Shown: in pieces, positions 4,378 to 34,600 of the stretch | Layout of the letters: every line of letters starts with the position of its first letter | Numbering within the stretch: the first letter of the stretch is position 1 | Notes under the pieces: generated by a model | Told to the model about the DNA's origin: nothing | What the model saw: only the letters and a program-made list of their open reading frames with translations | Database searches by the model: none | Position numbers and translations under genes: made by a program | Source of the DNA: Ophelia neglecta | Lineage: Eukaryota | Length of the DNA stretch: 64,000 bases | Reading direction: 5' to 3' | Assembly (NCBI GenBank): GCA_965285935.1 | Contig: OZ260663.1 | Coordinates: 84,382,001-84,446,000 of the forward strand

Positions 4378-4698
4378 ATGTTTTGTGGCTGTGGTAAAAA
4401 GAAGAAAAAAGACAAGAACAAAGATGATTATTACAAGAGGTACTCGCCCCCCTCCTCTACGGAGAAGTTAGTGGGTGCCCCAATGACCCCTCCTCCCCGA
4501 CCGAGGGAGGGGGAATCTCCACCGACCGACACCGCAGAGCAAGGCTCTCAGCTACAAAACAGTACAGGGAGCCTTTACGATGAGGCCGCCATCCCCCTCG
4601 TGGATGATCTCAAGGATAGTCCTAGTGCTGCTCAAAAGTCAGAAAAAAGTGATACCGAACTGGAAAAAAGTGAAATAAAAACTCAGAGTAGCAGCCAG
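4378..4698 (+). CDS. MACF1/DST: Candidate alternative first coding exon (107 aa, [11 protein letters not shown]...SSSQ), CH1-less isoform
   Basis: In-frame TAA at 4369-4371, A at -3 of the ATG, protein-like composition, donor CAG|GTAATG in phase 0 matching the phase-0 CH2 exon at 13411. Confidence 0.75.
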
Positions 4699-10600: not shown

Positions 10601-13600
10601 GGCTCACATTTTTATCCAGATCTTATCAGCTGTACTGCAATGCAAACTGATGAAATCATCAGAAATGAAGCCAGGCCCTAGCTAAATGAATTGACTCCTC
10701 TCTCCTGTAAATCATTCACTCCCTCAGAGTTAGTTTAAGTTTGTACCTGCAGGTCTTCTCATGTGATATATCATTAGAAATAAGTTCATAGCTCTTATCT
10801 TTTTGTTGTTTTGTTCTGCTCTAAGCCGTTGACTGTTTTACTTATTTTTTCCATATTTCTCTCTTTGACTTGTTTTCTATGGTTGACCTGTTATCCGAGT
10901 TATTCAGGTAATTTGGTCTAAGACTAAGTTTGTGAGTTATCAAGGAATGCATTGTGTTACCAGGTTGTCAGGTACACTAGTGACTGGATTAAAACTGAGA
11001 TTGGCTAGTGATATGTTTTGAATCTTGATACTTCCTAGCACACAAATAACGCTGTCTTGCCTGTTTATTTATTCTCTCAAACGCTGAGTGAGTCCTCACA
11101 ACATCAGGATCAGGCCGTATATCATGCTTTTCAGAAGTGAGGAAACGGAGCTGGCTTATTTGCCACAAGATAAATCCTCCCCTACTCCTGAGAATGTTTA
11201 TGATTTGCCTCTTTGTAATAAGTCAGCTTGGACTAGAAGAAACTAGATTTTGTATTTTTAACCATTAGCTGTATACCGAGCCTGCCTGGCTGTAATACCT
11301 GCATGTAGCCTGTGGCTTGTCTGATCAAAAACATAACTGTTACTGTAATAATGGAGGCTCCCTGCATAATAAGGTTATACTGGATTATGCCGAGCTGGTG
11401 AATAAAAAAACCCTATGTGAATATTTGTGTGACTGACAATTATAAATATAAGCCCCCAAGTTAAATAACAAATTGAATTTTCAGACATCACAGAGCATTA
11501 ATATTATCCAGACTTCAAGGTTTGAGGGATCCTTTTAGATCCCAATATATCTTCGTTGTGTGGAAAGAGTGACTATGTCATATTTAGATAACTTGAGCAG
11601 GCTGTTGATTACGGAGCCCAACAACGCAATTGGCCTGGATTTATTATTGAATAAATTATATGTAGGTTTCAACCTGCAAAGCATATTTAAGTAGCTTTAA
11701 AACCCACATCAAATGTTATTGTTACCTAGATGTACCAGCTGGCTACTTAGAAAACATATATTGATGTACACGTTGATATATATTGATAGACATACCGATA
11801 TGAGGTTGCCTGGAGAATTTTCCTCTCCATGAGTTTAGTACCTAACATTGATGTAGGTATGTGTACATAGTTATGTAGCTCTGTTGGATGACTCAAACGC
11901 AACAATGTTGATGGTGTCTTAAAAAAAACTCTAGTTGATCATAATGTATTGATTTGCATATTTTATACAGTCTGCTAGCCTTACGGCAACAGTGGATGTA
12001 GGTAGGAAACAGGTGGGTCAGGTCACCTACTGAATTAAGAGGGGAGATTAGAGGGGTCAAGACTCCCTTTCATTTAGAAGTGGGGTGGCAGAGGGGTCAG
12101 CTATGACCTCTCCCCTTTCCCTTCTTCAAGGCTTTTGCCATGAGAGACCCCTGATTCACACACTCCCCAGGTAACACCTCTTATCTCGATTGCTAGGCCC
12201 CCACCCCCTGCAAGACTGCACCTAGTCACCTTGCCAATCTTTTATTGGGTGTCAGTTGTCTCTGAAGTCATGTACCTATTGTTCCAATGCACTTTTTTTT
12301 ATGTATTTGTAAAGTTAATAAGGACTAAATTTATTGATTTACAGCTACAGGTGGTGATCAGTGTACACAAACCTTGAATTTGTTACTGGTCAACCATCAT
12401 TTTGATACATTTGTCATTATGTATATCTTCTTAAACTAAACAGTTCCCAATTTATGCGTCATACATTTTCAGTGTGGTCTGTTATACAGTTTCAGTGTGG
12501 TCTGGCCCTGTGTATAACCCATTTAAATACATCTCTATCAGTGGGTGTCAAGATTCTATATGGTCTCTTGACCGGGCTGACCAGCCACTTTCTCTCAGAT
12601 ATTTATGGCATAATTGTACAACAAACGTCTGAAGAACCCTTCATGTGGTATGATAGCCGGTCTCATTGTTTTGGCTAGGTCATCAAACCTAGTCCTGGCC
12701 GCTAGAGAATCTCTGTTATGTCCTACAGGGGGAACTTAGGTCCAAATAGAAAATGGTCACAATCTGTAAATGTGCCAATTTACATATATGAGAGATAGTA
12801 TATTTATTTTTAGTTATATGATTCATCTTGTTAGACTATTTGTTTTAAGCCTTTAGTGTTTAGTCTCAGTGGGATGTGTGTTGTTTGGTGTACACCTAGA
12901 TCCGTCAATTAGAGAAGGTGAGCTGTGTGTTTCCTGTGAGATCCCTGGCCAGGCTGGCAGTCTTAACACTCGGATGATTAGTCTTCTCAGTCAGCTGATA
13001 TTACTGATATCATATCTATACACCCATTTCTCCTATTGAGATAGAATAATCCAGCCGGGCAATTACGTCTACAATTGTGATAATGTGTGGATTGTTGTTG
13101 AAGGCTGGAAAAACAAAAGCAGGAGATTAATTATCTGGCACAAAAATATATTTTGACCTTTTATTGTCCTGGATAGTGGCCACCTCATGTTCAAATAGTG
13201 ATATTTCCTAGTCAAATTTATAAAATATGCCATGAAGACAAATATTTTTTCTAATTGATGAACATGTTCCGTGATAATGATAAATTTGACAAGACCTTGC
13301 TCAAGAGTCCTCATTTATCAGCCAGGCTGTGAGAATTAAGTATAAAAAAGATCCTACAATTCACTCTTGAGTCCTTGTTGTTTTAAAGTGGTGTTTTTCT
13401 GTTGTTTCAGATATCGGACGTTGTGGTAGCAGGCCAGTCGGACCACCTCTCTGCCAAGGAAGCCCTCCTGTTATGGTGTCGTCGGACCATCGACGGCTAC
13501 CCGGGCATACACATCAAGGACTTCACCAAGTCGTGGAGGGATGGCAAGGCTTTCCTGGCAATCTTACACAGACATAGGTAGCAACACACTAGCAATCATT

Positions 13601-16600
13601 TTCTTTTTGTGTTTTTTATATAAACTTGTTATAAGATATCACAATCAATACCTGTGTTGATATGTAGGCTTGAGTTAATGACCTGTTTTTTACCTGTTTT
13701 CGCTTTTTTTCTAATTTATTAAGCTCAAAGTGAACCAAACAAACAAACACATATTGGTAGGATACTTCCTGTGATAACCAGTAAATAATCTTCTTGCCCA
13801 GGCTGTAAATTGAGTTGGTAAAGTGGGGATGAAATAACCTTTGGTAGGATATTGTACTTGTAAGTTACTGCCTGATCCTGACCTATAAGTAATCGAGGGG
13901 GGGCGGTCTAGTCTGTGGGGTTCATTTTGTAATTGACAGAAACTGCTGCCTTGTCTGGCAGAATTGACACTTAAACCAAAAATAAATATGTGGTTTTTAT
14001 AGATGCCAAAAAAACATATCACAGGTGATTTATTTGATTAAATCACTGTCAGGTTTTGTGGCCCCTCTGATATGACCTGTGTCTCCTCTGAATGGCCTTG
14101 GGGGTTCACTGTCAAACCCTGGGGTTCCTCTCGCAGGCGTTGGAGGTTTTCTGTCAACCCTGGGGCTCTTCTGTCGGGTCTTGGGGGTTCACTGTCTAGC
14201 CCTGTGGCTCCTCTGTCAGGCTTAGGGGGTTCTCGGTCAAACACTGGCACTCTTTGGCAGGTCATAGGGGTGCACTGTCAAGGCCTGTGGTTCTTTTGTC
14301 AGGAATTTGGGGTTCTCTTCAAACCCTGTGGCTTCTCTGTCACCCCTTGGGGTTTGCCGTCAACCCTGGGGTTCCTCTGTCAGGCCTTTTGGGTTCACTG
14401 TCAAGCCCTGGTGCTCCTCTGTTAGTTAAAATTGGTCCAGCTTTGTAATACCGAAAACTCTCACTCAATTTGATTTCTATTGAGCAAATTTCTAGGCTGT
14501 TTGATCATATCTAGTTGTATTCCTTTAGTGACAGGAGAAGTAAAACTACCCTTTTCGATTGTGAAGCATTGCGTCATGGCAATGGCACCCGTCCAATAAC
14601 GTCCAATAACGTCCAATAACGTCCAATAACGTCCAATAACATTGGATGTAGTGTGTACTTGTATCAGGCTTAGTTAAGGTTAAACCAGTTATATACACAG
14701 ATCAGTAATGTAATAATCTGGGGCTTATTTATACCTCAGATGATTATACCTCATGATGTTTGACTTCTCACTAGAAAGTAAACTACTCTGCTAAAATTAG
14801 ACGCAGAAGTCAAAATCAAAGCATGCTATGAATGCCTCAGCAAAATTTAAAGACTAAATGTACCTGAAACTGTAGGGTAGATTTTTATAATGACCACTTG
14901 AAAAGGTTTGAAAGTTTGCCACATACGATCACATCCTGAAACTAATTGGCTGTGTCTAGCAATGAAAGCTTAAAAAGGTATATTTCAGTGGTAAATTGGT
15001 AAATGAATAAACTGCCCAGTAATATTCATTATTTGGCACCGACGTTGTGTAATTCAATGGCAATTGTCATGGTCTGGCCAGATACTGGAGTTTTGTGCTC
15101 AAGTTAAGTCTATTATGGCAAGTAAAATGAAAATGAGAGAAAAAGCACATAATTTATTATACATTAAACATATATATGTAAATTGGCATGTAATCATTCC
15201 CTTCTGACAGTTAACAGTGAGTGAGAACTCTCTCTCTCCTGTCAATTCTGTCCAATTCACATCTAAGTCAACCTTTTGAAATAAGAATCCCAAAACTTCA
15301 TAACAGCTATTTATTGAAGGATTGGAAGTGAAAATTGAAGGATTACATTTTCTGTAGAAGAAGTTGGTGTTTTTCTCCACCACTGTTAAAGTAAACAACA
15401 TGTGCACATACATACTAGGTAATTGATATAACACTTGATTGAGTAAGTGAATTAGGGTGCCAGAATCTTAAAGTATAAGTCTGAATTTATATCAACTGTT
15501 CCTAGTCCTGTACCTCTGTTATTGATGTGCCACTCACATCATACAGGTACATGTGTCTACTACATTCTTGACAAAGTTAATTATTCGGTTATTGACTAGT
15601 CGGGTGTTTCCACTCCATTGATTGCCCGTGTCTTGTGTTCCAGGCCAGATCTTGTAGACTTCAGGAGAGTAAAGAGGCAGTCAGCCAGAGAAAACCTGGA
15701 AATGGCCTTCAGTATAGCAGAGAGAGAATTTGGGGTCACGAGGTTGCTTGACCCAGAAGGTAAAGTGGATTAGAATTTATTTGCAACAATCACTCCTTTT
15801 GACCTCTTAGTTTGAACAAATGTAAAGAAAAACAGGCTTTCTGATGAAAATAATGAATACTTGACATAATATCTAGTGCCAGCTGTTGCTTATCTCCCCT
15901 ATTTGGGGAGAAAAAGTGTATTTATATATTTTGGGTCAAAAATTACAAAAAATAATCTATATGTTTAGTGTAAGGAGCAGTGTAGTGCCCCTGTGATGTG
16001 AGAGAGGGACTTTAGTTGTTTACATAAGAAAGCCTAGATCTATCTGCTGCATACTTTGTCCAAGAATTTGTCTGGCAGGGAGACTGTTCTCTGCAGACTT
16101 TTTGCCATTGTGTACCAGCCACTAATCTGGCTGTACTCCAAACAGTCTAGGTATGATCAGGTGATGAATAGGTTTATCTTACTATGACAGGAACCAGTGT
16201 AAATTACTGGCAAGGGTAGATTTAAGGGGGGAGGTCAGGGGGGTCAGAACCCAGGTGCCAAGAAAAGAGGGGTCAGCTCATGGGAGGTGTGTGGGTGGAT
16301 GGGAGGAGTCAGACCCTCACCATGGGAGTAACACCCACTTTTTCTAAGGGGAGGGACACTAAAAGAGCAGTCCTGAGCCCAAGACTATTAAATGACCTGC
16401 CCTCCCCTCAAACCCTAACTTGTTACTGTGAGCTGACCAACATTTCTAATTACTGGAGCCTCTGAGGACACATTTCAGACAAGGGTCAACCCATATAGCC
16501 AGTACAGTGGTCCCTGCAATGAAGGGACCCTCCAATGAAGGGACTCCCTCCAACCACATGACATTTTTTAATGCCCATGTCTTATCTTTCCTATGTTAAT

Positions 16601-19600
16601 GTCCCTCTGATGAAGGGACTCCTGCTATTTAGGGACACTTTTGCTTGCATGAAGAGATGTCCCTACAACACAGGGGCCACTGTAAAGTGTATCAGACATC
16701 TATCTACTACTGGTCACTAGCTCATCATGTAGTTAACCAGGTATGACCGCTATGATGACCGCCATGATGACCGCTATGATGACCGTCAGGGCTGCCCGCC
16801 TCTGTACTGTAATGTATTACAATGAAAATCACTTGTGAGATAATGGGTCTTGTCACTACAAAATGAAAAATGGGCCAGGTCAATTGGGATCCTGTGTTTT
16901 TGTGACTCTATGGGTAGTTACCAACTGAGTATTGTTATAAACTTACCTGGGACGTGATCACACCTGGCTTATAATACATGTACTTTGTTTTTTTTTGTAT
17001 ATGAACATGTGATTCTTGTCAGGTAAACCAGCTATCAGACCCACACAATGTTATGAGAAGGTGCCCAGAAGACAAGCGTTCTTTCGTTTGTATTTAATAA
17101 CAACAGTGGCAGAGGAAATTCTAGGAAAATGATTAGCAGCAGAATTTGAAAATGCATATAAAATGATTATTATTACCAGTCTTATAGGATATATTAAATA
17201 CTTGTTGGGTATTATACATCATTATAATGTGACCCCCCATGGTACAAAATTTTTTGAGGATGAAGAACCAAAAACTGGTCCTTTTCTTAAATTTTGCAAT
17301 AGAAATGTTTCCTTGAACAAAATATTGGGACAGGGCAAACACATTTGCCTTATTGCTTTTGATAAAAGAAAATTCTTGAAGCCAAAATACATTACTGAAT
17401 AGCACACTGACTGTGTACATTTTGTTTACATATGGTACATACATAATAACTGAGCATAAGGTATGATCAATAAATCATTGATATTAATTCTAGTTTTATA
17501 GCTAAAACCAATTTAAAACCTATTTTATAGGGCTAGTAAAATATCAATGGTATCATCTGGGTGAAATCATGTGACTAGTTAGCCTATTAGTGATCACATA
17601 TGTGTTAACATTGATATGTAAGAGATAAGTTGTTAAATGTCAGACAGGCTTGTTTCAAGCTACACAGGTTGCTATGAGGCACGGCTATGTCAGCTTTTTA
17701 AAGTCTTCTCAATCATTGTACACAATATGGCTTGATGGTTGCTTGAAAAGTGCAACCGCTTTGAAAAAAAATTACAGTTCTTGCGCTTCATTGGGGGGAT
17801 AATGGTATGTAGGATTTGGCTCAGAATCAAAATCTGCCATTAAAATGATAACCGTCGATATCGGAGCTGTGGCCAAGGCTGAAGACTGGAGGTGGCATCA
17901 GCTTGAATGTTAAATAAAACTCCTGGCTAGAAAACAACCAATCAATGAATGTGTGCACGCATTATCTCACTGCTGGGTCCCAACTGCGAGCATGGCCATT
18001 TAAACTAGGAAATCCAATAGCAGTGTTGTCAGCTAATCAAGTATGCGTTCTTTCAAAAGAACAGTTACATTTTTCATTGGTCACAGGTGTTGTCTATTAT
18101 TATATATATATTATATTATATACATCTAGGAGTAGGTCAATATTAGGATGATGCCTTTTCTGAGAAGGCAAACCCTCCTTTTTAAGTATTTTATTGGAGC
18201 TGTTAAAATAAATCAAGTTCTTTCAACACAGAAGAACTAACCTGTCTTATTGTTATATACATGTACCAGGGTATGATAGATATATAAACAAGGACATGTA
18301 AGCGTGTGGAAACATTGACAAGTTTGACTTCCGTTTTTAAGTAGTATCTTATCAGAAGGGACATACAGTGAAACCTGGAAATTAGAGACAAGCAAGGGAC
18401 TGTGTTAAAGTGCCCTGTTTTCTAAGGTGCCCCTATTTTCAAGGTTATTTTACATATAAAACAATATGTTGGTTCCTAATGTAGCTGTCCCTAATTATCC
18501 AGTGGCCCTAATTTCCAGGTGTCCTTTAGACCAGGTTTCACTGTACCTGTTTGTGTCTTAAATCCAGACCATACAAACCTTTAGATGAGAGTTAGATAGA
18601 ATGCCCATCACCACCTCAGGCTGTATCTCAGGTGTACAAGGTTAACATGTACATTTCTGTCCAAATAAACCAGTAAATATCAGAATGCTGCCGATGATTC
18701 TGACCAGATGATCTGGCCATGCCAATGGCCTGCAGTGTGCCAGGACCCTGTGCTAGCCCTAGGGCTACACAACACACATGATGTGTGGGTCTTAATAGTC
18801 ATGCAGCTTTTATTCATTTCTTTTTACCACTTTGCTGGTATAAATCCCCCTCCCCCCCCCCCCCCCCCCCCTACTCCACCTGGCATTCAGTGCCTCAGTC
18901 AACACTTGGTGTAGAAAGAGAACAAAACACCTGTCCTATTTGGCCCCTGACAATACACTAGCATATGTTATATATTGTACTCAATAAATAACCCCTCCCC
19001 CTCCAGCCCGCCACAGCCCTCCTCAGCCCCACATACCATGTATTACATTGTCCTGTACTGTATTAGAGCCATACCACACCCCCAAGGTAGATTATTCACC
19101 TGTACATGTACCCAGCTGATGTCTCTCTACCTTCAGGCTACAAGGCTATAGATCATAACTGGCTCATACTACAGTCTGCCTGAAAATATGAAAAAAATGC
19201 CTAGGTGGTGAGCTAGAAAATGTGTACATTTTAGAAGTCTAATATTCAATATAAAGCATAATATTGTGATCATAGTTGTAAACCTGTTGATGGGACATGT
19301 TAAAAGGCTTCATATAAACATTAAATTATGGTTGACAATAGATTGTATGGGGAACTGAAACCTTAACTTTTAAAAGATAAGAATCTTCTTAATAAACTGT
19401 GTCCCTCCTGGCAATATAAATAAAAATAAATAATGTTCCCCAAGGTACTGGGAAATATTATTTTACACCTTGTCTGGCGTTAGGTGTTGGACATATTTGG
19501 TTGCCATGGCAACAGAACCTGTTTAATTTTGTAGATAACTCAATTAATGTACAACGGTTGGTTTTGAAGGGGGGACATTTACTGGGTTACCTGTCTAGTT

Positions 19601-22600
19601 GGAACTCAAGAACCCACCTTTTACTTATCAGGTTTTAACAAGGTTTTCCAATTAATGATTTTTGTCCGTTTGTCCTCCCCTGATATGTGAAAGGTGTCAT
19701 CAGATGTGTGCTACTTAAATACCAACATCAGACCCAAATAACCTCTCTCCCCACGTTGATCAAAAACCCTGCCTTAAAAGACACCTTGGAATTAAAGACA
19801 CCTTGAAATTAACAACATCATCACTGGGTCAAAAAAACCATACAACTGAACCTAGAAAGTATTTACGCATCTAAAGTAAGGCCTTTTGTGCTCCGTGCTC
19901 CTGTACTGTTTATTCGTGTCCTATTAAAATGAGAGCTGGCTCCTTCTTTGACTAGGCTCTGTAGTGTCTGGGGGGAGGGGGGGGGGAGGCTTATATGTGT
20001 TTATTTTGGTATTCTATATATATTCCTGTGTTTGATATTGTTCTATATGTGGGTGAGATAGATTGAGATAAGATCCCACTACTTCCTCAGCCTAGTTACT
20101 CTAGTTTTTATTTGAGTATTTTTTATTGAGTATTTGATATTTATTTTGTTATTTTTAATGTTACAGATGTGGATGTGGCAGAGCCAGACGAGAGGTCACT
20201 TATCACATACGTGTCTTCCCTGTACGACGTGTTCCCGGAAGTCCCCACCGTGGAACAGTCTCTCAGGGACAACGTAAGTCTTCTCATACTACTACCCTGC
20301 CACTATCATTCCTACTGGTACAGATGTCCATTAATTTCACTATTGAGTTATTAGCTTGGTAGCAGAATCTTTGTTTTGAACCATGATCCTTTCAGCATGG
20401 GCTATCAGCCTGAGAGATGAGACAGGTATATATTGGAGGTGTATGACTCAGCCATTACACCTGTGTTATGAGATAGGCTAGGTGACTAGGTGTCAGGTAG
20501 ACAGCTCTGGGGCCAATAGGCTAACCTCTGATTGACAGGTATGGGCTGTGGATCTATAACCTCTGTGTCAGCGTCTAGATTGTATCTAGACAACAAAACA
20601 CATCGCTCAGGACTTTGGTTTTGAATACTTCTCATCACTCTTGTTCCAGCACACAATCACGCTGCCGTTATTCAGTTGTCATGTGAGAGGTTCATCCAAA
20701 TGGCAATTCTCTAAAGAAAGTAAATTCCAGTCTATCATAGAATAGAAGTACTTTGATAATTATACCCTGGACTTGATGAAAACATACAACTTTAACTCTG
20801 TTGACAGTACTACATTAAATTTATGAAAAATTGATAAGGAGATTCATTTCATGCATGCTGCACACGATGTAATGTGGCAGACAGCTAGTTACAATCAAAA
20901 GAACGAGGAATAAGAACCCATGTGGACAGGGGAGATGTCTTCACCAGCTTTGGGTTGTTACTATGATTATGCAAAACATTTGCCCTCAGGCCCTGGGAAA
21001 TATCAATGGGAAAAACACAAATATGTACATGATCATTGAATCATAGTTTTATGAACTAATTTATCATTATGTATAAGCCTCATCAAATATTGACACACCC
21101 AAGGACATTCTTCAGACACTTCCATGTTCAATATGATAGTTTATAAGTAGTTGTGTAAAACAGTCTTGGACTGGAGGAAAACACTACTTCCGAGTAACTA
21201 ATATTGCAAAGCAGTCGATTATGAGATGAAAACGTATGGAAAAACATAGAAAATTAATGATTTGGCCTTAAGAACATTAATAGTAGTTGAGTCTGAGTCC
21301 AGGCTAAGCTAGTAATGTCTATGATTCTGTCCTGGTTGTGTTGATCCCACCCATATCAGTCTGTCAGTGCCTTGAGTAGTTTACTCAGTCAGTTGAAATA
21401 TGACTGTTCCATATAGAAATTGGAAACTGTCTGAAGTAAAATTTGACAGACAAGTTTGAGCTGTTGTCATGGTTACCCAGGATAACCTACCATCCCACAG
21501 TAGTTCAACTCCAACCAAATCTTAGTTTATTATCAGATATTATGATGTTCCAGCGTTTATAATTCTCCTATTAAAACACTTTTGATTAAGAATTATTACT
21601 GATATTTGTTTTCAGGAGCGTCAGATAAAGTGGCAAGACTACAGGGAGCTGTCTGGCTCCCTTCTCAGCTGGCTCCGCGACGCCACCGCCATGATGTTAG
21701 ACAGAAACTTCCCTACTACACTCATAGAAATGAAGGTAGGCCACTGAGCAGTGACTGAGCAGTGACTGAGCAGTCACTGAACAGTGACTGAGCAGTCACT
21801 GAGCAGTCACTGAGCAGTCACTGCTGAGCAGTCACTGAGCAGTCACTGAGCAGTCACTGAGCAATAACAAACAATAACAAACAATAACAAACAGTAACCA
21901 CACTTACAGCCTGTATCAGTAAATTAGGGTATGAAATTCCCTTCTTTGGCCATTGTCAATAAAAATAAAATAAAAAATTAATTTTTTTTTATTGTCGAAT
22001 AATGGGGAAAAATTGTCTTCTACCGTAGCATTGTTAAAAAACTGTTTAGAATTTTGTTTATTAATTCTTAATTGTGCTTCATAGCCCTTGTACAAGCTGT
22101 GGCCTACTTGGGATATGCCTTATCATGTTTGGTAATTTTCCTCCCTGATTTCTTTCCAGTCCTTGTTAGCAGAGTTCAACCGTTTTCGAATAGAAGATGT
22201 CCCACCCAGGCTGGCTGATAAACAAAGATTAAAGCATCTATTTGATGAACTAAAGGTAGGAATTAAAACTCAACATTACAATTATGGTCAAAAACATACT
22301 TATAATCAAAGAAGAATCCCTAAAAACACTGATGGTTTGTGGCTGTCAAAGATTCAAGAATTTTTGTTGCAATCCCAGTACTACAGGTCGATGCTTTTGA
22401 AGTAGTGAATTCCTGGTGAGATACAGAGTTGCTAGTTACCTGTACTGCTAGCGGCTAGTAGTATTAATTATCTAGGTTGCCCTTCATCATGTAAATCTGT
22501 AAAACTATGTGTCAGAATTAACATGATTCATTGACATTGCTGGAAGTAACAGAGATAACCTCAGGCAGTTATGAATATTAATTAATAATATTTTTATTCT

Positions 22601-25600
22601 TGATTCATAGCTGAACTACCAGAGCATATGATGTTGTCAGCAGTTAAAATAACAGTTTCATAATATTGTCAATCATTAGAATGAGAGTTCCATAATACTT
22701 TCAACAGTTAAAATAACAGTTTCATAAAATTTTCAACTTTAAAATAACAGTTTCATAAAATTCTCAACTTTGACAAATACAGTTTCATGATACTGTCAAC
22801 TGTTAAAAAAGCAGATTTATAATACTGTCAACTGTTGAAAGAACATTGTCATAATGCTCCCACATTCAACATTCATAGGCCTAGTGGTCTAAAGGTCTAA
22901 AGATACAAGGTAGATTCTATTTTGCAAAATGACATTTACATTTACTGCGCAGTTAAATGTGTGATGTTTTACATCATTGGAAAATAAAAAACAGCAGTAA
23001 TTTAATGTATGATGTTTTACTGAGTTTTAAAAACACCAGCAGTAATTAAATATATGTTTTGCATAGTGTGAAACAAAAACCGACTCGTCAGACAGTATAC
23101 ATTAATTACGCAGTAAATGTATGCTGTAGATATTTTAGCTGTAGGCTAGTTGTTAGGGTATATCTGTCTATCTGTACTCTGATGTAGATGGTAGACCATG
23201 GCAGCTGTTGAGCTAATGTCCTGATTTACAGCCATTTATCAAATAAATAACCCAGCCTTAGGAAGAACCAGTCGCCAGCTTTGGTGGGGTTCACCGGGAG
23301 TCTTTGATTTACATGTTATTTGCCATCACTTGTACCTTTATTTCTGGTAGATTGTGGCTTTCTTGCCAAGTCCTGTTAGTTATATCTGGGCAGTAGATAG
23401 TGCTGGCTGCATATCATGTCCACACCGAGACTCATAGCTGAGATACAGCGGCTTGATGAGATTTTAGATTATTAATAACATGCAAAGAATGGTATATTAC
23501 TTTCATCTTATGATGAACTATCATAATCTGACATATTAGGGAAATATCAGTCTGAGTTTTGTTTAATTTAGATGTTATTAAGTGTTCTGTTGGTGGTGTG
23601 TGCTGGCCTAGAGACCAAGCCTCAAGCTAGTAATAACATTAGTAGATATTAAACTTATATCCACTGCCAAAAAAAACAGATGTGAAATTAGGGTGAAACC
23701 CAATGTCTGAATCATCAGAAACAGCTAAGCAAGCAGTCGGCAGTGTTCTGTCAATAATAAGCTCACATATTGCTGGGTGCTGTTTGAAGGGCTTGTAAAA
23801 TGTGGTTTTCGAGATTTTTTCACGGTCAGCTATGTCCATGTATATGTTATATTAACGGGAGCCAGTGTGAATGTATGCTACTGACTGTACAAAGTAGCTT
23901 GTATTAGTATCTGAGCGGTACCAAAGGAGCAGTACCTGGGTATCTCTGGTTAGGTACCTCAATGCTAAGAATCTCTTTTCGAAGAACAAGGACATTAGTC
24001 TATTTCGATTGCATATTTTCAAAACAAAGGGATGGTATTGAGGGAGGTTCCACTGCTGTGTAAAATTCCAAGCCTCAGTTGTCGGTTGCTTCAGGCACAT
24101 GGGGAAAAGCAATGCCAGTTCTGTGAATAATGTGTGCCGGTTCAGCTTATGTAGGATTTGTTTGTGTCTACAAAACAGTGTAATGCCATACTTAGTGTGT
24201 TCAGAGAATTGACATTTGCTGCAGCAAATTGTGCTGTATTTTCGATCATTTCACAGTGGATTACATGAGAAATGTGAGCTTTAGCCAGCTGTAGTTGGTT
24301 TCTCTTATCACCGTCTGTCTGGATGAGGTACACCTTACAACAAGTCAGTGGTGCAATCCACCTTAAACAATGAAGGTCTCCTCCAACATTCACTCTGTAT
24401 GTACTCAGCATGTTAGTGTTACACGGTGGTGTACATTATGTGAACAATGGAGTTATACAGTGCTAGCCCCCACTATGCTGAATATCAGAAGTGTCTCAAA
24501 CTTCACCTATTAAATCCTGAAATGCTGGCCAGAGACAATGGTGTTGCCGGTGATGTAGTTGAGTAGTGTTGAGGGTATTAAAGCTAAGATGGAGGACTCG
24601 GAGTGGTGTTACAATGCCGACTGGCTCCAGTTGCCCGTTCTGTTTGGGATCCTATTGGTCCATCTTGGCAGTTTCTGGGTGGCTTGCCGCTTCCATTACC
24701 AGCGGAAATTCCAGGTTGGTTGATTTCATCCTCAAATGTCAATATTTAAGTTATTTATTGCCCCACCGTGGCTACCACTGTGAGTACATGGCAGGCAGGT
24801 GTGATTGAGTGTTTGAACTGACAGCGGTACCTCCGGTGTGTACTGCAGGAAAAACTTAAAATGATCCCTGCTTTGAAGTCAGAAAGAGAAGTTAAACAAT
24901 ATTATGAAACTTATACTTACATTTGCCCCCTCCCCCTCCCCCCCCCGTGCCCTCCATATTTACATGTATTTGTTTCTCTCTCCCCCCTCCCCCTACCTAG
25001 TAAATGAGTATCCCCCCCACCCCCTCGCTTTTTGCCCTACCTTAACTTGTATATTTGTGTCCTCCTTTTCTCCCTTCTCTCCTACATGTACATTACTATA
25101 TTGTAATATTTAGTAAATGTTTGTGACCCTCTCCCAGTCTCCTCTTTACTTTAACATGTACATGTAAATGTCACTGCTGACTTCCCCATCAGAGTTGTCA
25201 CAGAGCTGTGGGTGTACAGTATGTACTATGTATGTTGTCATATCCATCAGACCTAGCCATTCAGTCGACAGCCCCCACTTACTCCCGGCTCACTCCATGT
25301 GTCATGTATCTACACCAACTTTACACTCTGTGCCAAAAAACTCACCATCATCAGACTAAAAATCAAATCAGCTGGTCTAGTCTGAAAAACATACCAGCCC
25401 AGCAAGCAGACGTCACTGTATGTGTCTGTGTATGTTTACTGGAGGGTTCCACAAGGGGCCTTTGTCCGAGGAGACAGGTTCATGTCTATTTGATACTATT
25501 TACTTCCACCATATTGTTAGTGCGGCCTCCCAGCACAGACTCCCACACAAGGTCAGGTGTTTCCACGTCCCTGATTGGGGGTCTTTTTTGGTATTCAACA

Positions 25601-28600
25601 TTTACTATTATGTGTATAGCATACCTCATCACAGAAAATATTTCCGGCCAACTTGAATGAAGCCCTTATTCCTTGATCACTTTTGTCAGCCATCTTGTGT
25701 TGAGGAGTTGAGTTTTAACCCAGAGAAGCAGGATTGTTGTTTGATTGCTGTATTAATTAAACCAGTTAATACCTCCAGAACCAAAGGCTTGTGATTGTCA
25801 CAATTGGTAATTAGATGTTAAGTACCTGGTATAATGTAAGAGGCTGACTTGTGGCTGTTCCTCGTCCTGTCTTCATAGGATATGATGTACATGAAAATGC
25901 TGGCTCTGCTTCAACCATTAAAGTGATTACCTACAATGACCATCATTATTGGATGGAGTAAGTGTAGTTTGGTTGTTATATTTTCATTTTTGTTTCCCAG
26001 AATTTGCACGCCGATGTTGGTCAGTTTGACCTGGACCCCGAGCTTCACATGGACAATATCAACCGACTGTGGGACCGCTTCACCCTCACCCAGCAAGAGA
26101 AAGATATGGCCGTCAATGCAGAAGTGTCAAGGTCAGTAGTATATATAACAACTTATAATAATTCATATTTTAAATTGTTTGTATTTCACTTTGGGGGAGG
26201 TGGCGGGCACTGCCATTTAGATCCATACAAATTATGTGCCGCTAGAAAGGGTCATGTTTGGGGAAATTTTCCCTAGATAAGTGTCTGGTTCCCCGGGAAG
26301 TCCTTAGGTGAGGGTCCCTTTTTCTGGATTGTTGGCAGTGACATTAACATGTATTGATATTTGGACATTTTGGCCATCTCCAGGCAATGGAAAATTGCCA
26401 AAAGGTTTTTTTTTTTTATGCAGTTGTTAAGATCTGTTTGTTTTTGTAGTGCCCCTCAGTGTCAAAGAGTCCAAAACAGCCTCTACCCCTAGTAATATCT
26501 ACATTGTCACTTCAGAAATATATATGCCATAAAAAATTTCACTTTTTAAGGGTAGGGTTTGAGACCTCTGGTGGCAGACCCCAATTCAATTTTAGGTTCA
26601 GTAACCCCCCCCCCCCCCCCCCACCTGGATATTGCCCATTGATTAATTATTAATCATTGATTTGTGGGAATCTTTGCCTGAAAATTCAGTTTGAAAGTAT
26701 ATTTGGATGTTGCAGTAAATTATATGAATATATGCTCAAGGTACATATTAATTAATTCTATTAATGCAGCTTGGCTTTAGAATGAAGAAAGCAATGTGGG
26801 TTTTGTGTTTATAGGTTAGAAAGACTGCAGCGACTGGCTGAGAAGGTACATCGGGACTGTCGCTCATGTGAGGACCATCTCGATGATATCGACCGCAGGA
26901 TCATAGAGGTAACACGTAACAATCAGTCACCGATCCTTAATGAGATCTCTACTCTACAAACTGGTACTCCAGACTTATAGTATAGAGATTACCAGACCTT
27001 TTAAATTGAGTTAAAATTAAAGGGCAAGCCCCATCCTTTTTAGCACCTGTAATCTATTAACTAGATACAAAAGAAGTTGTATTCAATGTTTTGTTAAAAG
27101 AAATGTGCTTGAGAAGATGACTGGTATGTCCAAAATAAAACCGAAAAAAAAAAAAAAATGTTTGAAAATGATATCATCCAGAGAGTGTGACCAGATGTCA
27201 AACATTCATGCTTATAAACTGACATGTACATGTACTTATTGTTTTGGTTCCCAGGATGAACAGAGAGTAGACAAGATGCACCCATTCGAGGCGAAGCGTA
27301 GCTGCGAAGCCATCGCCCACGCCCTTAAAGTAGTGGAGGACAATCTGCGTAATATGTTCTCCGACGTACAGGCTCTCAAAGACGGGAGATATCATCAATC
27401 TGAACAGATGTACAGAAGGTAGGCTCACAAACCTCAAACTCTGATTAAGAGTTAAAGTCAGATGACTTCCAATCCAGAAATAGGAGATATTTTCTCTCTC
27501 TTAAAAAACACAGGCCTTTCTGCAGGTTAGCAAAGGCATCTGCTAACAAGATTGTATATGAGGCAAAAATGATGTGCCTTCAGTTGTCCCTTTGGAATTA
27601 CTGAATACTCCATTTTCTATTACCTACCCCCAATTGTAGTTAGAGTTGTCTGTTGGCGGTTTGGACAGAATATGTTTGAAGGGAGATTATAAATTTCCCA
27701 ATTGGAACTGAATTTCTCCTCCTATTTTTATTCCTCAGTTGATGTCCAGAATTATGGTGGCCCAAGCTTTTAGTTAAAATAAACATAATTATTTGATTAA
27801 TCATTTATTAGTGAGGATAAGTATTGGAAAAAGTTGACAGTCTACAACATATATAAAAAGAGTGGATGAATAAGTGACAGTCTGATTTAGTTTCAGTCTA
27901 TGAGAAAAGTGGTTGATTTAGTTTCAGTCTATGAGAAAAGTGGTTGATTTAGTTTCAGTCTATGAGAAAAGTGGTTGATTTAGTTTCAGTCTATGAGAAA
28001 AGTTGTTGATTTAGTTTCAGTCTGAGAAAGTGGTTCATTTAGTTTCAGTCCACCCTACAATGCTCTGTTCATCTTTAGCTATCTATGCCCGTGGTAATCT
28101 CAAGATGATGTGATGGGGTATCAGATCAAGCTAGGGTCACTAGAGGTGAGCTGATGCAATCTAAACACACAACATGTCAATGCATGTGATCATCAAATCC
28201 TAGCCTTTAAAAAAAAATATTAAGGGTGTATTGAGAACTAGCACTCATTTACGAGTGGTTCTGCTTAGTATTATTTCTGAGGATTGTCCGTCCAAAGTTT
28301 AATGAATTTTTTTGGTGTAACTGTTTAGTTTCAATGCAGTAGATTGTTGTTATCCCAAGCACAGGTTGTAATCAGCACACATTTCTGTAAATTAGCCCTT
28401 CAAATGGTACTCACAAACCCTTGTTTTCTGAGGCTGACTTGATAGGAAAAACTCCAAACACCATTTTATGGAATGTACATGCATGATGGTACAATTGAGA
28501 TATTTTCTTTGAAGTAATTTCCCCACTTCTCAAGACTGATTAATTTGCAAGGTTCCTGTACTTTTATGTTGCTGGATGTAGTCCAACAATTGACTTAACA

Positions 28601-31600: not shown

Positions 31601-34600
31601 TAAGATTATGTATAACTACACTCCTTGTTGGTCTGGCTGGGTGTAACTACAGAATCTATAGATTTCTGTAGCAAATCATAAGAAAGCGGAAAGCCCCTTG
31701 CTCCACTAATTCATTGGGCCCTCAGCCATTAGTCATGCAGTAATTTCCCCAAATGTCTATTTGAATGGTGATATGAGAGTTTTTCCTTGTTAATTTTGTT
31801 AACGTTGTACATTTCAGTCGGGTTCCACCCGCCGTCTTCAAGCCCTGGAGTCTCTCCTCGTCTTTATGGAGAGAGGCACTCAGGAATTGATCTGGCTCAA
31901 CGAGAAGGAAGAAACCGAAATCTCCCGAGACTGGAGCTCTAAAGGACTGGCCATTCAGGAGATCGAGGAATACTACGAGGTGAGAGACTGACAGGACTCC
32001 GTGTTCTCATCCTATCAATATCATTGTTAGAAAGGGCTGCTCAGAAGTATTGGGCAAGGGATTTGGAGCTAAATTAAAGGCACCCAAAGTCCACCCCACC
32101 CCACTCCTTCCCAGTTCCATGACAGAATAATCAACCATTACCTAAATTTTTAGGTACACCTCCTCCTTTTAACCCAAAGTCAGTATATTTAAAGGATCTG
32201 ATATGGTAAACTTTAACCTCCTGAAAGTTAAAGAAAATCGTCAGCACCCCTTGACATATTAAGTTCTGAAAAGAGGGATACATTAACTTCTTCAGTAGGG
32301 AATCTACTGAGGGAAACAATTCCAAATGGACCTTTCTGTAAACACCACCTTTTTCTTACTCAGTATTTTCTGGTCAGTCCTAACTACCTTATATATTGTG
32401 ACATGTTACTGTGCACTGTACCCGTGTATAATTAAACCATATTTCATATGCATCATATTTCTGCCTCATCTCTAACACTGAAGTAGTACAGTCATCAGAC
32501 ACTAATGTTCATATCACCGTTCTCCAGTTAATGTAGCCCAGGGCCACTTTTAGAAATCACCAACTCATGTAGATTTGCAGGCCTAGACTGCATAGTTTTA
32601 GATACAGCTATCAGAAGAAGCAGAATATTAGCTGTACTTTGTCATGGCTTATTTGTTGTGCATTGTGAAAAAATAGTTCCGTTTTCAAATTTGCACCCTA
32701 CCTAGTATTGTTCAGTTTGTTAAAATGAATAAACACTGATTTCATTTCTCAAATTCTTTGTAATCTTTTGTGACTTCAATGCTTTTTGAATACTCCAAAA
32801 GAAGGATTGTTGCCTGTATATATGAGTATTGTCCTTTTTCATGTACTATAATCATGAATAATTCGAGTATGAAATAAAAATTAATTACATGTTACTCTAC
32901 TCAGTTGGAGGCAGGCAACCCTCCAATAACTATATCAAATGCAGTGAGAAGTTTTAGTTAAGAGTGTGCAGCATGTCAGTACCTGTATTAATATGAAGGT
33001 ATATGGATATTCGTTTCCAGCGCGGCTATCCCCGATCTAAGGTTTGATAATTATCATGCATGTCATGTGACCGTCTGTTGAATTTCAGTTTGGAGATTTT
33101 CCTGTTAAGCATTTGTATTGTTGTACCAGTTGTCCCAAAGCCTCCCCCCCCCAAATATTATTTGCTGACCCCCCCCCCCCCCCCCTGGTTTGTAGATGTA
33201 TGGCCATAATTGCTGTTTTTACCCAAGTGTTATGATAGTCATACACCACCTTGTCAGTAGTGATTGGGTTTTATTAGATTGTACGTATGATAATCAGACA
33301 GCTAATAGGGCCGGTTATTGCAGTTAATCTGGTGATATGATGTCAAAAGTGTGTTTCATCACTGCATGCCTGTTTGTGCTGTTCATCAACGACGTCTGTA
33401 AGGAAGGTGTGACAAGCATTCTCAGCACAAACCTTGTACCTTAACTGAGAAATTTGGACATGTTGGCTGCCGCACAATGTGCATGTATAGGTACATCTTG
33501 CGTTCAGAATGCATGTCTTACATTCCCTAATAACAGAAGCAGTCATTCTGTACCCTGCAATCACTAAGACCATATGGCTAGCACTAGCCATCATCAGCTA
33601 TGGTACAAACCACAGTCATTCTGTACCATGTAATCACTTAGACCATATGGCTTGCACCAGCCATCATCAGCTATGGTACAAACCACAGTCATTCTGTACC
33701 ATGTAATCACTTAGACCATATGGCTTGCACCAGCCATCATCAGCTATGGTACAAACCACAGCCATTCTGTACCATGTAATCACTTAGACCATATGGCTTG
33801 CACCAGCCATCATCAGCTATGGTACAAACCACAGCCATTCTGTACCATGTAATCACTTAGACCATATGGCTTGCACCAGCCATCATCAGCTATGGTACAA
33901 ACCACAGTCATTCTGTACCATGTAATCACTTAGACCATATGGCTTGCACCAGCCATCATCAGCTATGGTACAAACCACAGCCATTCTGTACCATGTAATC
34001 ACTTAGACCATATGGCTAGCACCAGCCATCATCAGCTATGGTACAAACCACAGCCATTCTGTACCATGTCATCACTTAGACCAGATGGCTAGCACCAGCC
34101 ATCATCAGCTATGGTACAAACCACAGCCATTCTGTACCATGTCACCACTTAGACCAGATGGCTAGCACCAGCCATCATCAGCGGTCATACAAACTGGATA
34201 GTACAAGCCTAATTGAAATTAAGCAACACAAAAAACATACAAAGTTGAGGAGTAATGTTTGGACCACACACACCAGAGTAGAAGCTCTTCCAAAGGCAAA
34301 CCAAATTGTAAACAATATTTTGGGGCATTTTGTTGTGTATTGGGTGAATATTCTTTGTAAATTTTATATCAGTTTCTCTGATTGCTAATCCACTTTCATA
34401 ATTAAGAACTTGATTATCGATTAATCTTTTGTTATTATCGATGATCGACCAATCACTACGTGTCAAAATGATAATGCCTGGAGCACATTTGAGCTTTGTC
34501 GGCCATTTATTTGCATGATCTTTAACCTACTATTGTTATTTAAAAACTGTTAGCTAATTTGTAGTCTCATCTCATAAGATCTATGTAATAGTGCCATGTA

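What the first reader, a model, noticed from the sequence alone, without database searches (positions are those of the whole stretch)
24589..24714. Hidden alternative first exon encoding a transmembrane anchor: candidate ABD-less, membrane-tethered giant spectraplakin
Seen: in the intron between two plakin-domain exons there is an ATG in strong Kozak context (AAGATGG), with an in-frame stop 11 codons upstream. It opens 42 codons and ends at CAG|GTTGGT in phase 0, the phase the next exon (26001) requires. The peptide has an acidic N-terminus (MEDSE), a ~19-residue hydrophobic stretch ([19 protein letters not shown]) and a basic C-flank (RFHYQRK). Established: this charge asymmetry fits an N-out/C-cytosolic signal anchor (positive-inside rule). 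Vertebrate plakins use alternative first exons for membrane targeting (dystonin-a2 transmembrane leader, plectin 1b mitochondrial anchor), but those isoforms keep the actin-binding domain. Inference: this would be an isoform lacking both CH domains and part of the first spectrin repeat, anchoring the plakin/plectin-repeat array directly to a membrane. It is too short for the ORF track and easy for automated annotation to miss.
Basis: partly seen in the sequence, partly recalled or inferred. Interest (0 to 1): 0.8.

Follow-up and report, generated by a model that had tools for sequence, protein, structure and literature searches.

The report
Probable hidden membrane-anchor first exon
A 42-codon open frame inside an intron of a worm cytoskeletal-linker (plakin/spectraplakin) gene uses codons like the gene's real exons and has a look-alike in the same intron of a second species, so it is probably a real alternative first exon adding a membrane anchor, but no RNA data exist to prove it is used.

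Summary
There is an ATG at 24589 in AAGATGG context, an in-frame stop 11 codons upstream, 42 codons, and a CAG|GTTGGT donor in phase 0, the phase exon 26001 needs.

The structure alone is weak evidence: about 0.15 such candidates are expected per 44 kb of random sequence.

GC at codon positions 1, 2 and 3 is 0.55/0.33/0.74. The gene's small exons show 0.60/0.34/0.62, and the intron GC is 0.39. Its synonymous-codon score equals that of real exons. Random hydrophobic stop-free frames reach it in 0.03% (flank composition) to 1% (ORF's own composition) of cases.

A second species has an ATG-started, hydrophobic, even more clearly coding-like frame in the same intron and phase. Sequence similarity to it is unproven. 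Two other species have short introns without it. A third has only a non-coding-like ORF.

No RNA runs exist for this organism, and the closest relative's intron was unreachable.

Verdict: about 0.6 that it is a real alternative first exon giving an isoform without the actin-binding domain, and about 0.27 that it is chance. The hydrophobic segment is only marginal as a membrane span.

The scan earlier noted a different membrane-anchor exon in a spectraplakin gene on another piece of this genome (s1-739825).

The parts
24589..24714 (+). Candidate alternative first coding exon: 42 codons with an acidic start, a hydrophobic stretch at codons 15-33 and a basic flank
   Evidence: Sequence and translation. 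Kyte-Doolittle 2.04. GC1,2,3 of 0.55/0.33/0.74 and synonymous-codon score 0.27, like real exons. Single copy in the genome.
24556..24558 (+). In-frame TAG that closes the frame upstream of the ATG
24715..24720 (+). Splice-donor-like GTTGGT after CAG, in phase 0
   Evidence: It scores 4.8 bits on a matrix of 19 donors of this gene. Real donors average 3.6 bits leave-one-out, and 1.1% of 2994 decoy GTs score as well.
22139..22255 (+). Constitutive plakin-domain exon (first spectrin repeat) that the proposed isoform would skip, together with all CH-domain exons upstream
   Evidence: tblastn with the Tubulanus protein P0021, residues 335-373. It ends AAG|GTAGGA.
26001..26134 (+). Common exon that would accept the leader. 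It has a good polypyrimidine tract and cccag acceptor, phase 0.
   Evidence: Orthologues were found in four other species.
24508..24514 (+). TATA-like TATTAAA about 80 nt upstream of the ATG. It is a possible core-promoter element but common in AT-rich DNA.
   Evidence: Inference only.

Best explanation
The stretch 24589-24714 is a genuine protein-coding exon. It is most simply an alternative first exon driven by an internal promoter in the intron between plakin-domain exons 22139-22255 and 26001-26134.

Its transcript would splice 24714->26001 in phase 0. The resulting isoform would lack both calponin-homology domains and the first two helices of the first spectrin repeat. It would begin with a 42-residue leader: a short acidic end, a moderately hydrophobic segment of about 19-21 residues, and a basic flank. 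That leader would act as an N-terminal signal-anchor. It would hold the plakin domain and the giant plectin-repeat exons on the cytosolic face of a membrane, either the ER/nuclear envelope or, as for plectin 1b, the outer mitochondrial membrane.

Shown: the open frame, start context, donor, phase, exon-like codon usage, and a coding-like counterpart in one other species.

Inferred: transcription, splicing, membrane insertion, topology, and the target membrane.
For: 1. **Structure.** Searches confirm the frame, start context, donor and phase. The candidate is the only hit under strict criteria in 232 kb of strand from related loci.

2. **Codon usage.** GC3 is 0.74, above all 50 sense and 52 of 53 antisense intronic ORFs.
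   - The synonymous-codon log-odds, trained on 19 small exons of this gene, is 0.27. Real exons give 0.19 +/- 0.16 leave-one-out.
   - One of 90 intronic ORFs reaches the candidate's score, as do 0.12% of 826 stop-free windows.
   - None of 72 real intronic hydrophobic windows reaches it. Random hydrophobic stop-free frames reach it in 0.96% of cases with the ORF's own composition and 0.03% with flank composition.
   - The other two frames of the stretch score negative.

3. **The scan is specific.** Of 28 sense-strand regions scoring at least 0.2, 21 are known exons. One of the 7 others, 38001-38171, turned out to be a real exon missing from my list.

4. **Second species.** In the ERZ25767047 species (reverse complement of L012), positions 1898-2107 hold a comparable frame in the intron before the orthologue of exon 26001.
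   - It has ACCATGG context, a stop 6 codons upstream, 70 codons ending in a hydrophobic stretch, and a phase-0 GT.
   - Its GC1,2,3 is 0.74/0.37/0.86, against 0.62/0.31/0.83 for that species' exons and 0.42 for its introns.
   - None of 3153 own-composition simulations reaches its score.
   - Its alignment score to the candidate is 33, above all 70 control hydrophobic intronic ORFs.

5. **No repeat or known element.** Neither ORF is a tandem repeat. No RNA family or Pfam domain explains the site.
Against: - No RNA run of this organism is available. The three runs that hold the stretch are DNA-like contigs of one sample and show no 24714->26001 joint.
- No homologue turned up in the word search. 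Among 1.84 billion representative proteins, the only hits were translated tandem repeats.
- A whole-genome search with the second species' ORF does not find the candidate. Shuffle-based similarity gives only p = 0.08.
- The orthologous intron is 283 bp in Tubulanus and about 1 kb in the P0007 species, with no leader in either.
- The ORF in the L006 species is not coding-like.
- The second species' donor scores poorly on this species' matrix.
- CpG observed/expected at the site is 0.28-0.38, the gene-body average.
- Ten ATGs lie in the 300 nt upstream, two of them in equally good context.
- The hydrophobic segment is marginal, about +2 kcal/mol on the Hessa scale.
- The one variant in the frame, 24595 G>C, changes D to H.
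- The isoform would start with an orphan third helix of a spectrin repeat.
- I tried several codon measures. The first, trained on the giant exons, gave only 10.5%.
Confidence: 0.6

Rival explanations
1. It is a chance open frame in a T-rich intron, with no function. T-rich sense-strand introns throw up many hydrophobic ORFs. One of them happens to have a good ATG context, a donor-like GT in the right phase, and high GC at third positions.
For: - About 0.15 structural look-alikes are expected per 44 kb.
- There are 52 hydrophobic ATG ORFs (about 30 independent) on the sense strand.
- There is no RNA, no promoter signal, and many upstream ATGs.
- No homologue was found.
- The feature is absent from two relatives, and the ORF in a third is not coding-like.
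- The criteria and the best codon test were chosen after seeing the candidate.
Against: - It holds at about 1% even under the most conservative null.
- The joint chance with the structural features is of the order of 0.001 per window.
- A coding-like counterpart in the same intron of another species would be a second coincidence.
Confidence: 0.27
2. It is real coding sequence used differently. One option is an in-frame cassette exon: the AG at 24587-24588 or at 24572-24573 would give a 126- or 141-nt exon between two phase-0 exons. The others are a small nested gene or a decaying former exon.
For: - The codon usage says coding but not how the exon is joined.
- Both AGs keep the frame.
- 126 and 141 are multiples of three.
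Against: - The 35 nt before either AG are G/A-rich with no polypyrimidine tract, unlike the acceptor of exon 26001.
- A hydrophobic 42-residue insert in the loop between helices B and C of a spectrin repeat is structurally awkward.
- The ATG directly follows a closed frame, as in first exons.
- A stand-alone product would be only 44 residues, with no homologue.
Confidence: 0.08
3. The exon is real and first, but the leader is not an ER-type N-out/C-in anchor. It could be a mitochondrial outer-membrane signal-anchor like plectin 1b, or only a peripheral, amphipathic or cleaved targeting peptide.
For: - The hydrophobicity is moderate: about +2 kcal/mol, with H, G, S and P inside the segment.
- Basic residues lie just after the segment. 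By my own knowledge, this is the signature of outer-membrane signal-anchors.
- Plectin 1b is inserted in the outer mitochondrial membrane through its first-exon sequence (PMC2426950).
Against: - The N-terminal flank is acidic (four acidic residues in the first 11), unlike Tom20-type anchors.
- No predictor for targeting was available here.
Confidence: 0.05

Closest known systems
Dystonin/BPAG1 isoform a2 (N-terminal transmembrane leader from an alternative first exon)
   Same: Both are spectraplakin genes in which an alternative first exon would supply a hydrophobic membrane-anchoring N-terminus (PMC3352950, PMC3279385, PMC3308695).
   Different: The a2 leader lies upstream of the actin-binding domain, and the isoform keeps that domain. 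Here the exon lies downstream of both CH domains, inside the first spectrin repeat. No sequence similarity was tested or claimed.
Plectin isoform 1b (outer mitochondrial membrane anchor encoded by exon 1b)
   Same: Both have a short first-exon-encoded N-terminal targeting and anchoring signal on a plakin with plectin repeats (PMC2426950). Both combine moderate hydrophobicity with a basic flank.
   Different: Plectin 1b splices into exon 2 and keeps the actin-binding domain. The target membrane is unknown here.
BPAG1e and MACF1c (isoforms without the actin-binding domain)
   Same: These isoforms start after the CH domains from an internal first exon (PMC3352950). By my recollection of the human sequence, BPAG1e joins the common sequence one exon further downstream than this candidate would.
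   Different: Their unique N-termini are soluble, not hydrophobic. BPAG1e starts at a spectrin-repeat boundary. This candidate would start in the loop before the third helix.
Earlier scan finding s1-739825 (giant membrane-anchor exon in a spectraplakin gene on another piece of this genome)
   Same: Same genome and the same idea: an intronic exon predicted to give a membrane-anchored spectraplakin isoform, kept in a second species, with no RNA confirmation.
   Different: It is a different locus and a 5.9-kb exon joined to the spectrin rod. The plakin-domain exon 27252-27419 of my gene has no second copy in the genome.

Membership tests
Alternative first coding exon of a spectraplakin/plakin gene | ATG-started frame closed upstream, with no usable acceptor in front | tested here: met
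   A stop lies 11 codons upstream. The upstream 35 nt are G/A-rich with no polypyrimidine tract.
Alternative first coding exon of a spectraplakin/plakin gene | Splice donor of normal strength, in the phase of the next common exon | tested here: met
   The donor scores 4.8 bits against a real-donor mean of 3.6, within the top 1.1% of GTs. Phase is 0 on both sides.
Alternative first coding exon of a spectraplakin/plakin gene | Codon usage of coding sequence of the same gene | tested here: met
Alternative first coding exon of a spectraplakin/plakin gene | Transcripts that start upstream and join the exon to the common exon | not testable with these tools
   No RNA run exists for the organism. The three holders are DNA-like contigs without the joint.
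Alternative first coding exon of a spectraplakin/plakin gene | Promoter signature upstream | tested here: inconclusive
   There is no CpG-rich island: CpG observed/expected is 0.28-0.38 against a mean of 0.33. The presumed first exon at 4378 reaches only 0.5. A TATA-like motif lies at 24508, but there are 10 upstream ATGs.
Alternative first coding exon of a spectraplakin/plakin gene | Conservation at the same intron position in relatives | tested here: inconclusive
   One of four species has a coding-like counterpart. Similarity to it is weak. Two species have short introns without it.
N-terminal signal-anchor (transmembrane) leader | Hydrophobic segment of about 19 or more residues | tested here: met
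   The Kyte-Doolittle 19-residue mean is 2.04.
N-terminal signal-anchor (transmembrane) leader | Predicted insertion free energy near or below zero | tested here: inconclusive
That is marginal. No dedicated predictor was available.
N-terminal signal-anchor (transmembrane) leader | Charge asymmetry fitting the positive-inside rule | tested here: met
   There are four acidic residues before the segment, and R, R and K after it. The topology itself is inferred.
Isoform without the actin-binding domain (BPAG1e/MACF1c type) | Start downstream of both CH domains | tested here: met
   CH-domain exons lie at 13393-20273 and the first spectrin-repeat exons at 21616-22255, all upstream of the candidate. 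This holds only if the exon is used.

The most novel reading that the evidence does not exclude
At least two worm lineages keep an internal promoter and a hydrophobic first exon in the same plakin-domain intron. The product would be a membrane-integral plakin with no actin-binding domain. It would tie the intermediate-filament-binding plectin-repeat array directly to an organelle or plasma membrane. Together with s1-739825, this would mean repeated use of membrane-anchor first exons in invertebrate spectraplakins.
Probability: 0.45. Interest if true: 0.6.

Novelty: new variant of a known kind. Interest (0 to 1): 0.45.

Why it matters
Spectraplakins and plakins get much of their functional range from alternative first exons that send the same giant linker to different places. 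Known membrane-anchoring leaders (BPAG1a2, plectin 1b) keep the actin-binding domain. Known forms without that domain (BPAG1e, MACF1c) are soluble adaptors.

A leader that anchors the plakin domain and about 6000 residues of plectin repeats directly in a membrane would be a new combination. It would show that membrane tethering of these linkers is older and more varied than the vertebrate cases suggest.

The case also shows that a 126-nt exon invisible to ORF tracks can be picked out by synonymous-codon usage trained on neighbouring exons. The same scan recovered a real exon that my list had missed.

Tried and rejected
**RNA evidence**
- The look-up of sequencing runs on 24200-24900 found only three DNA-like runs of one sample.
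- Laying those runs on 22000-27500 showed even coverage across introns and no joint at 24714.

**Homology searches**
- The word search with the 54-residue ORF found nothing.
- phmmer of the 42 residues against 1.84 billion representatives returned five hits, and the three I inspected (P0125, P0128, P0129) were translated tandem repeats.
- The own-genome DNA and protein searches showed a single copy. A weak hit on C8 has no plakin exons around it and is chance.
- Pfam and Rfam gave nothing. A mir-6130 match at 30 bits against a threshold of 117 is chance.

**Relatives I could not reach**
- The closest relative's contig (L004, about 70% identical) ends at the orthologue of exon 30622. A second look-up found no other contig.
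- P0004 and P0121 had no DNA on hand. P0122's contig is 689 bases.
- The genome search does not take ENA loci as handles.

**Tests that gave nothing decisive**
- The idea that three species share a homologous leader: pairwise scores against shuffles gave p = 0.08, 0.2 and 0.2.
- Enrichment of relaxed hits in the target intron is not significant: 2 seen against about 0.5 expected.
- The L006 ORF has a perfect donor, and both of its polymorphisms are synonymous. It is still not coding-like.
- Haplotype differences carry no signal: 1 in the ORF, 0 in the 150 nt downstream, 5 plus indels upstream.
- There is no paralogous plakin domain to compare.
- The first codon test, trained on the giant exons (GC3 0.43), was weak at 10.5%. 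The small exons have a different GC3 of 0.62.

Exons were searched one by one by reference.
Full report
**What is there**

The window is part of one plakin/spectraplakin gene on the + strand of contig C5 of a 762-Mb worm genome. The best named relative of its giant repeat exon is a Tubulanus polymorphus protein, which suggests a nemertean.

Mapping the Tubulanus protein P0021 onto the window gives this exon order:
- CH-domain exons at 13393-20273.
- First spectrin-repeat exons at 21616-21738 and 22139-22255.
- Then 26001-26134, 26807-26908, 27252-27419, and further exons downstream.
- Two giant plectin-repeat exons from 44230.

Every stated detail is correct:
- ATG at 24589 in AAGATGG context.
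- TAG 11 codons upstream.
- 42 codons, ending CAG|GTTGGT.
- Phase 0 on both sides.

The peptide has four acidic residues in its first 11, a 19-residue stretch with Kyte-Doolittle mean 2.04, and then R, R and K.

**Is the structure more than chance?**

Not on its own. The sense strand of the first 44 kb holds 140 ATGs followed by at least 25 open codons and a phase-0 GT. Of these, 23 have a hydrophobic stretch. About 30 independent hydrophobic ATG ORFs exist in all.

The donor is better than it looks. On a matrix built from 19 donors of this gene it scores 4.8 bits. Real donors average 3.6 bits leave-one-out, and only 1.1% of 2994 GTs do as well. This gene also uses GTTAGT and GTCAGT donors.

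With strict criteria the candidate is the only hit in 232 kb of strand from six related loci. Those criteria were set after seeing it.

**No expression data**

The one run search, aimed at 24200-24900, found three runs of one sample, none on record as RNA. Laid on 22000-27500 they cover introns and exons evenly, so they are DNA. They show no joint at 24714.

The only variant inside the frame, 24595 G>C, changes D to H.

The site has no CpG-rich island: CpG observed/expected is 0.28-0.38 against a gene-body mean of 0.33. The 300 nt upstream hold 10 ATGs where 5.5 are expected, two of them in ACAATGG context. A transcript would therefore have to start within about 35 nt of the ATG or carry short upstream frames.

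**Codon usage changed my reading**

The gene's small exons have GC at codon positions 1, 2 and 3 of 0.60/0.34/0.62. The intron GC is 0.39. The candidate shows 0.55/0.33/0.74. Its GC3 exceeds all 50 sense and 52 of 53 antisense intronic ORFs of the same length.

I then built a synonymous-codon log-odds score, which is independent of amino-acid composition, trained on 19 small exons:

| Set | Score or share reaching the candidate |
|---|---|
| Candidate | 0.27 bits per codon |
| Real exons, leave-one-out | 0.19 +/- 0.16 |
| Sense-strand intronic ORFs | -0.17 +/- 0.18 |
| Intronic ORFs, both strands | 1 of 90 reaches the candidate |
| Stop-free 42-codon windows | 0.12% of 826 reach the candidate |
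| Real intronic hydrophobic stop-free windows | 0 of 72 reach the candidate |
| Random hydrophobic stop-free frames, ORF's own dinucleotide composition | 0.96% reach the candidate |
| Same, flank composition | 0.03% |
| Same, whole-intron composition | none |

The last four rows control for the hydrophobic selection and the local GC. The other two frames of the stretch score negative on a three-periodic model.

An unbiased sense-strand scan at 0.2 or above flags 28 regions, and 21 of them are known exons. Of the 7 others:
- One is the candidate.
- One, 38001-38171, matches P0021 residues 1010-1062. It is a real exon that I had missed, which validates the scan.
- The remaining five are low-complexity or lie in a CpG-rich stretch.

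A caveat: I tried five related measures. The first, trained on the giant exons whose GC3 is only 0.43, gave 10.5%. A fair overall p is about 0.01.

**Relatives**

I fetched the intron that precedes the orthologue of exon 26001 in four species.

| Species (locus) | Intron length | What it holds |
|---|---|---|
| Tubulanus (L005) | 283 bp | No frame |
| P0007 species (L018) | About 1 kb (5052-6063) | No leader; nothing coding-like |
| GCA_022702835.1 species (L006/L007) | Over 5.3 kb | 81-codon hydrophobic ORF with ATG\|GTAAGT in phase 0 and a polybasic tail; its two polymorphisms are synonymous, but codon usage is background-like on a small training set |
| ERZ25767047 species (L012, reverse complement) | Over 5.3 kb | Frame at 1898-2107, described below |

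The frame in the ERZ25767047 species has these properties:
- ACCATGG context, a stop six codons upstream, and only two ATGs in the 300 nt before it.
- 70 codons ending in a hydrophobic stretch, with a phase-0 GT where GC drops from 0.66 to 0.32.
- GC1,2,3 of 0.74/0.37/0.86, against 0.62/0.31/0.83 for that species' exons and 0.42 for its introns.
- It is one of only two unexplained coding-like regions in 14.5 kb of intron. The scan there also recovered two real exons missing from my list.
- None of 3153 own-composition simulations reaches its score.
- It is not a tandem repeat.

Its weaknesses:
- The donor scores poorly on the window species' matrix.
- Homology to the candidate is unproven. The alignment score of 33 exceeds all 70 control hydrophobic ORFs. 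Against shuffles, however, p is only 0.08.
- A whole-genome search with this frame does not find the candidate.

The closest relative, about 70% identical in the repeat exon, would be decisive. Its contig stops at the orthologue of exon 30622, and no other contig was found.

**Weighing**

I take a prior of 1-3% for a hydrophobic alternative first exon in this part of such a gene. The factors I applied:
- About 10 from the structure.
- At least 10-30 from the codon usage.
- A few-fold from the coding-like counterpart in the same intron and phase of another species.
- A discount of three- to five-fold for the missing promoter signs, the upstream ATGs, the patchy distribution and the post-hoc choice of tests.

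This gives roughly 0.5-0.7 that the stretch is a real coding exon.

A first exon is the simplest use. The frame is closed just upstream, and the two in-frame AGs (at 24572-24573 and 24587-24588) have no polypyrimidine tract.

**How it would work**

Transcription from an internal promoter and splicing 24714->26001 would give a protein without either CH domain and without helices A and B of the first spectrin repeat. It would start with the 42-residue leader. The charge asymmetry fits an N-out/C-in signal-anchor.

The segment contains H, G, S and P and sums to about +2 kcal/mol on the Hessa scale (values from memory). It is therefore a marginal span. Moderate hydrophobicity followed by basic residues is also the signature of outer mitochondrial membrane anchors such as plectin 1b (PMC2426950). 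All of this is inference.

**Comparison with what is known**

BPAG1a2 has an N-terminal transmembrane domain and BPAG1a3 a myristoylation motif. BPAG1e and MACF1c lack the actin-binding domain (PMC3352950, PMC3279385, PMC3308695).

The candidate would combine the two themes, and that combination is not in the papers I read. By my recollection of the human sequence, BPAG1e's own first exon joins one exon further downstream than this one would. The region is therefore a known site of internal starts.

I file it as a new variant of a known kind, conditional on expression. The scan earlier reported another membrane-anchor exon in a spectraplakin gene on a different piece of this genome (s1-739825). 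I did not test that finding. The plakin-domain exon 27252-27419 has no second copy in this genome.

**Limits**

All 12 contig look-ups, 3 word searches, the one big protein search, the one run search, the one read-laying run and all 40 scripts are used.

Exons were handled one by one by reference.

Noticed in passing
window 39800-42000: This stretch has CpG observed/expected of 1.0-1.2 inside a gene body that averages 0.33. It lies just upstream of the giant plectin-repeat exon. It could be an unmethylated island or an internal promoter. Two weak coding-like patches, 40596-40724 and 41476-41607, lie in it.
   Followed up: no
window 38001-38171: This is a real exon missing from my tblastn exon list. 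The codon-usage scan found it, and it matches Tubulanus P0021 residues 1010-1062.
   Followed up: yes
window 26416-26599: DNA contig depth is 250-500 here against about 20 elsewhere, with many loose ends and joints. It is a high-copy repeat in the intron after exon 26001.
   Followed up: no
window 33594-34002: Six head-to-tail copies of a 73-bp unit appear as six nearly identical 38-codon ORFs on the - strand.
   Followed up: no
L012 reverse complement 1898-2107 (L012:18092-18301, - strand): This is an ATG-started, 70-codon frame ending in a hydrophobic stretch, with very strong exon-like codon usage. It lies in the intron before the exon-26001 orthologue of the ERZ25767047 species. A second GC-rich patch at 1221-1385 is open in two frames and not exon-like.
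   Followed up: partly
L006:4454-4696 and L007:4211-4453: This is an 81-codon ORF with a strongly hydrophobic stretch, a polybasic K/S tail and a consensus ATG|GTAAGT donor in phase 0, in the same intron of another species. The two differences between the two assemblies are both synonymous (TTG>CTA). Codon usage is background-like on a small training set.
   Followed up: partly
L006:5377-5790: In this species the counterparts of exons 26001, 26807 and 27252 are one continuous open frame (protein P0123). Two introns present in the window are absent there.
   Followed up: no
window 2-148: This is an open frame with exon-like codon usage and a direct duplication of a nine-residue motif (SNPPQSLEA twice) at the very start of the window. 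It could be an exon of the same gene or a repeat.
   Followed up: no
window small exons versus 44230-63599: The small CH/plakin exons have GC3 of 0.62, but the giant plectin-repeat exon 44230-55485 has only 0.43. Codon usage differs strongly within one gene, which weakens coding tests trained on the wrong part.
   Followed up: partly
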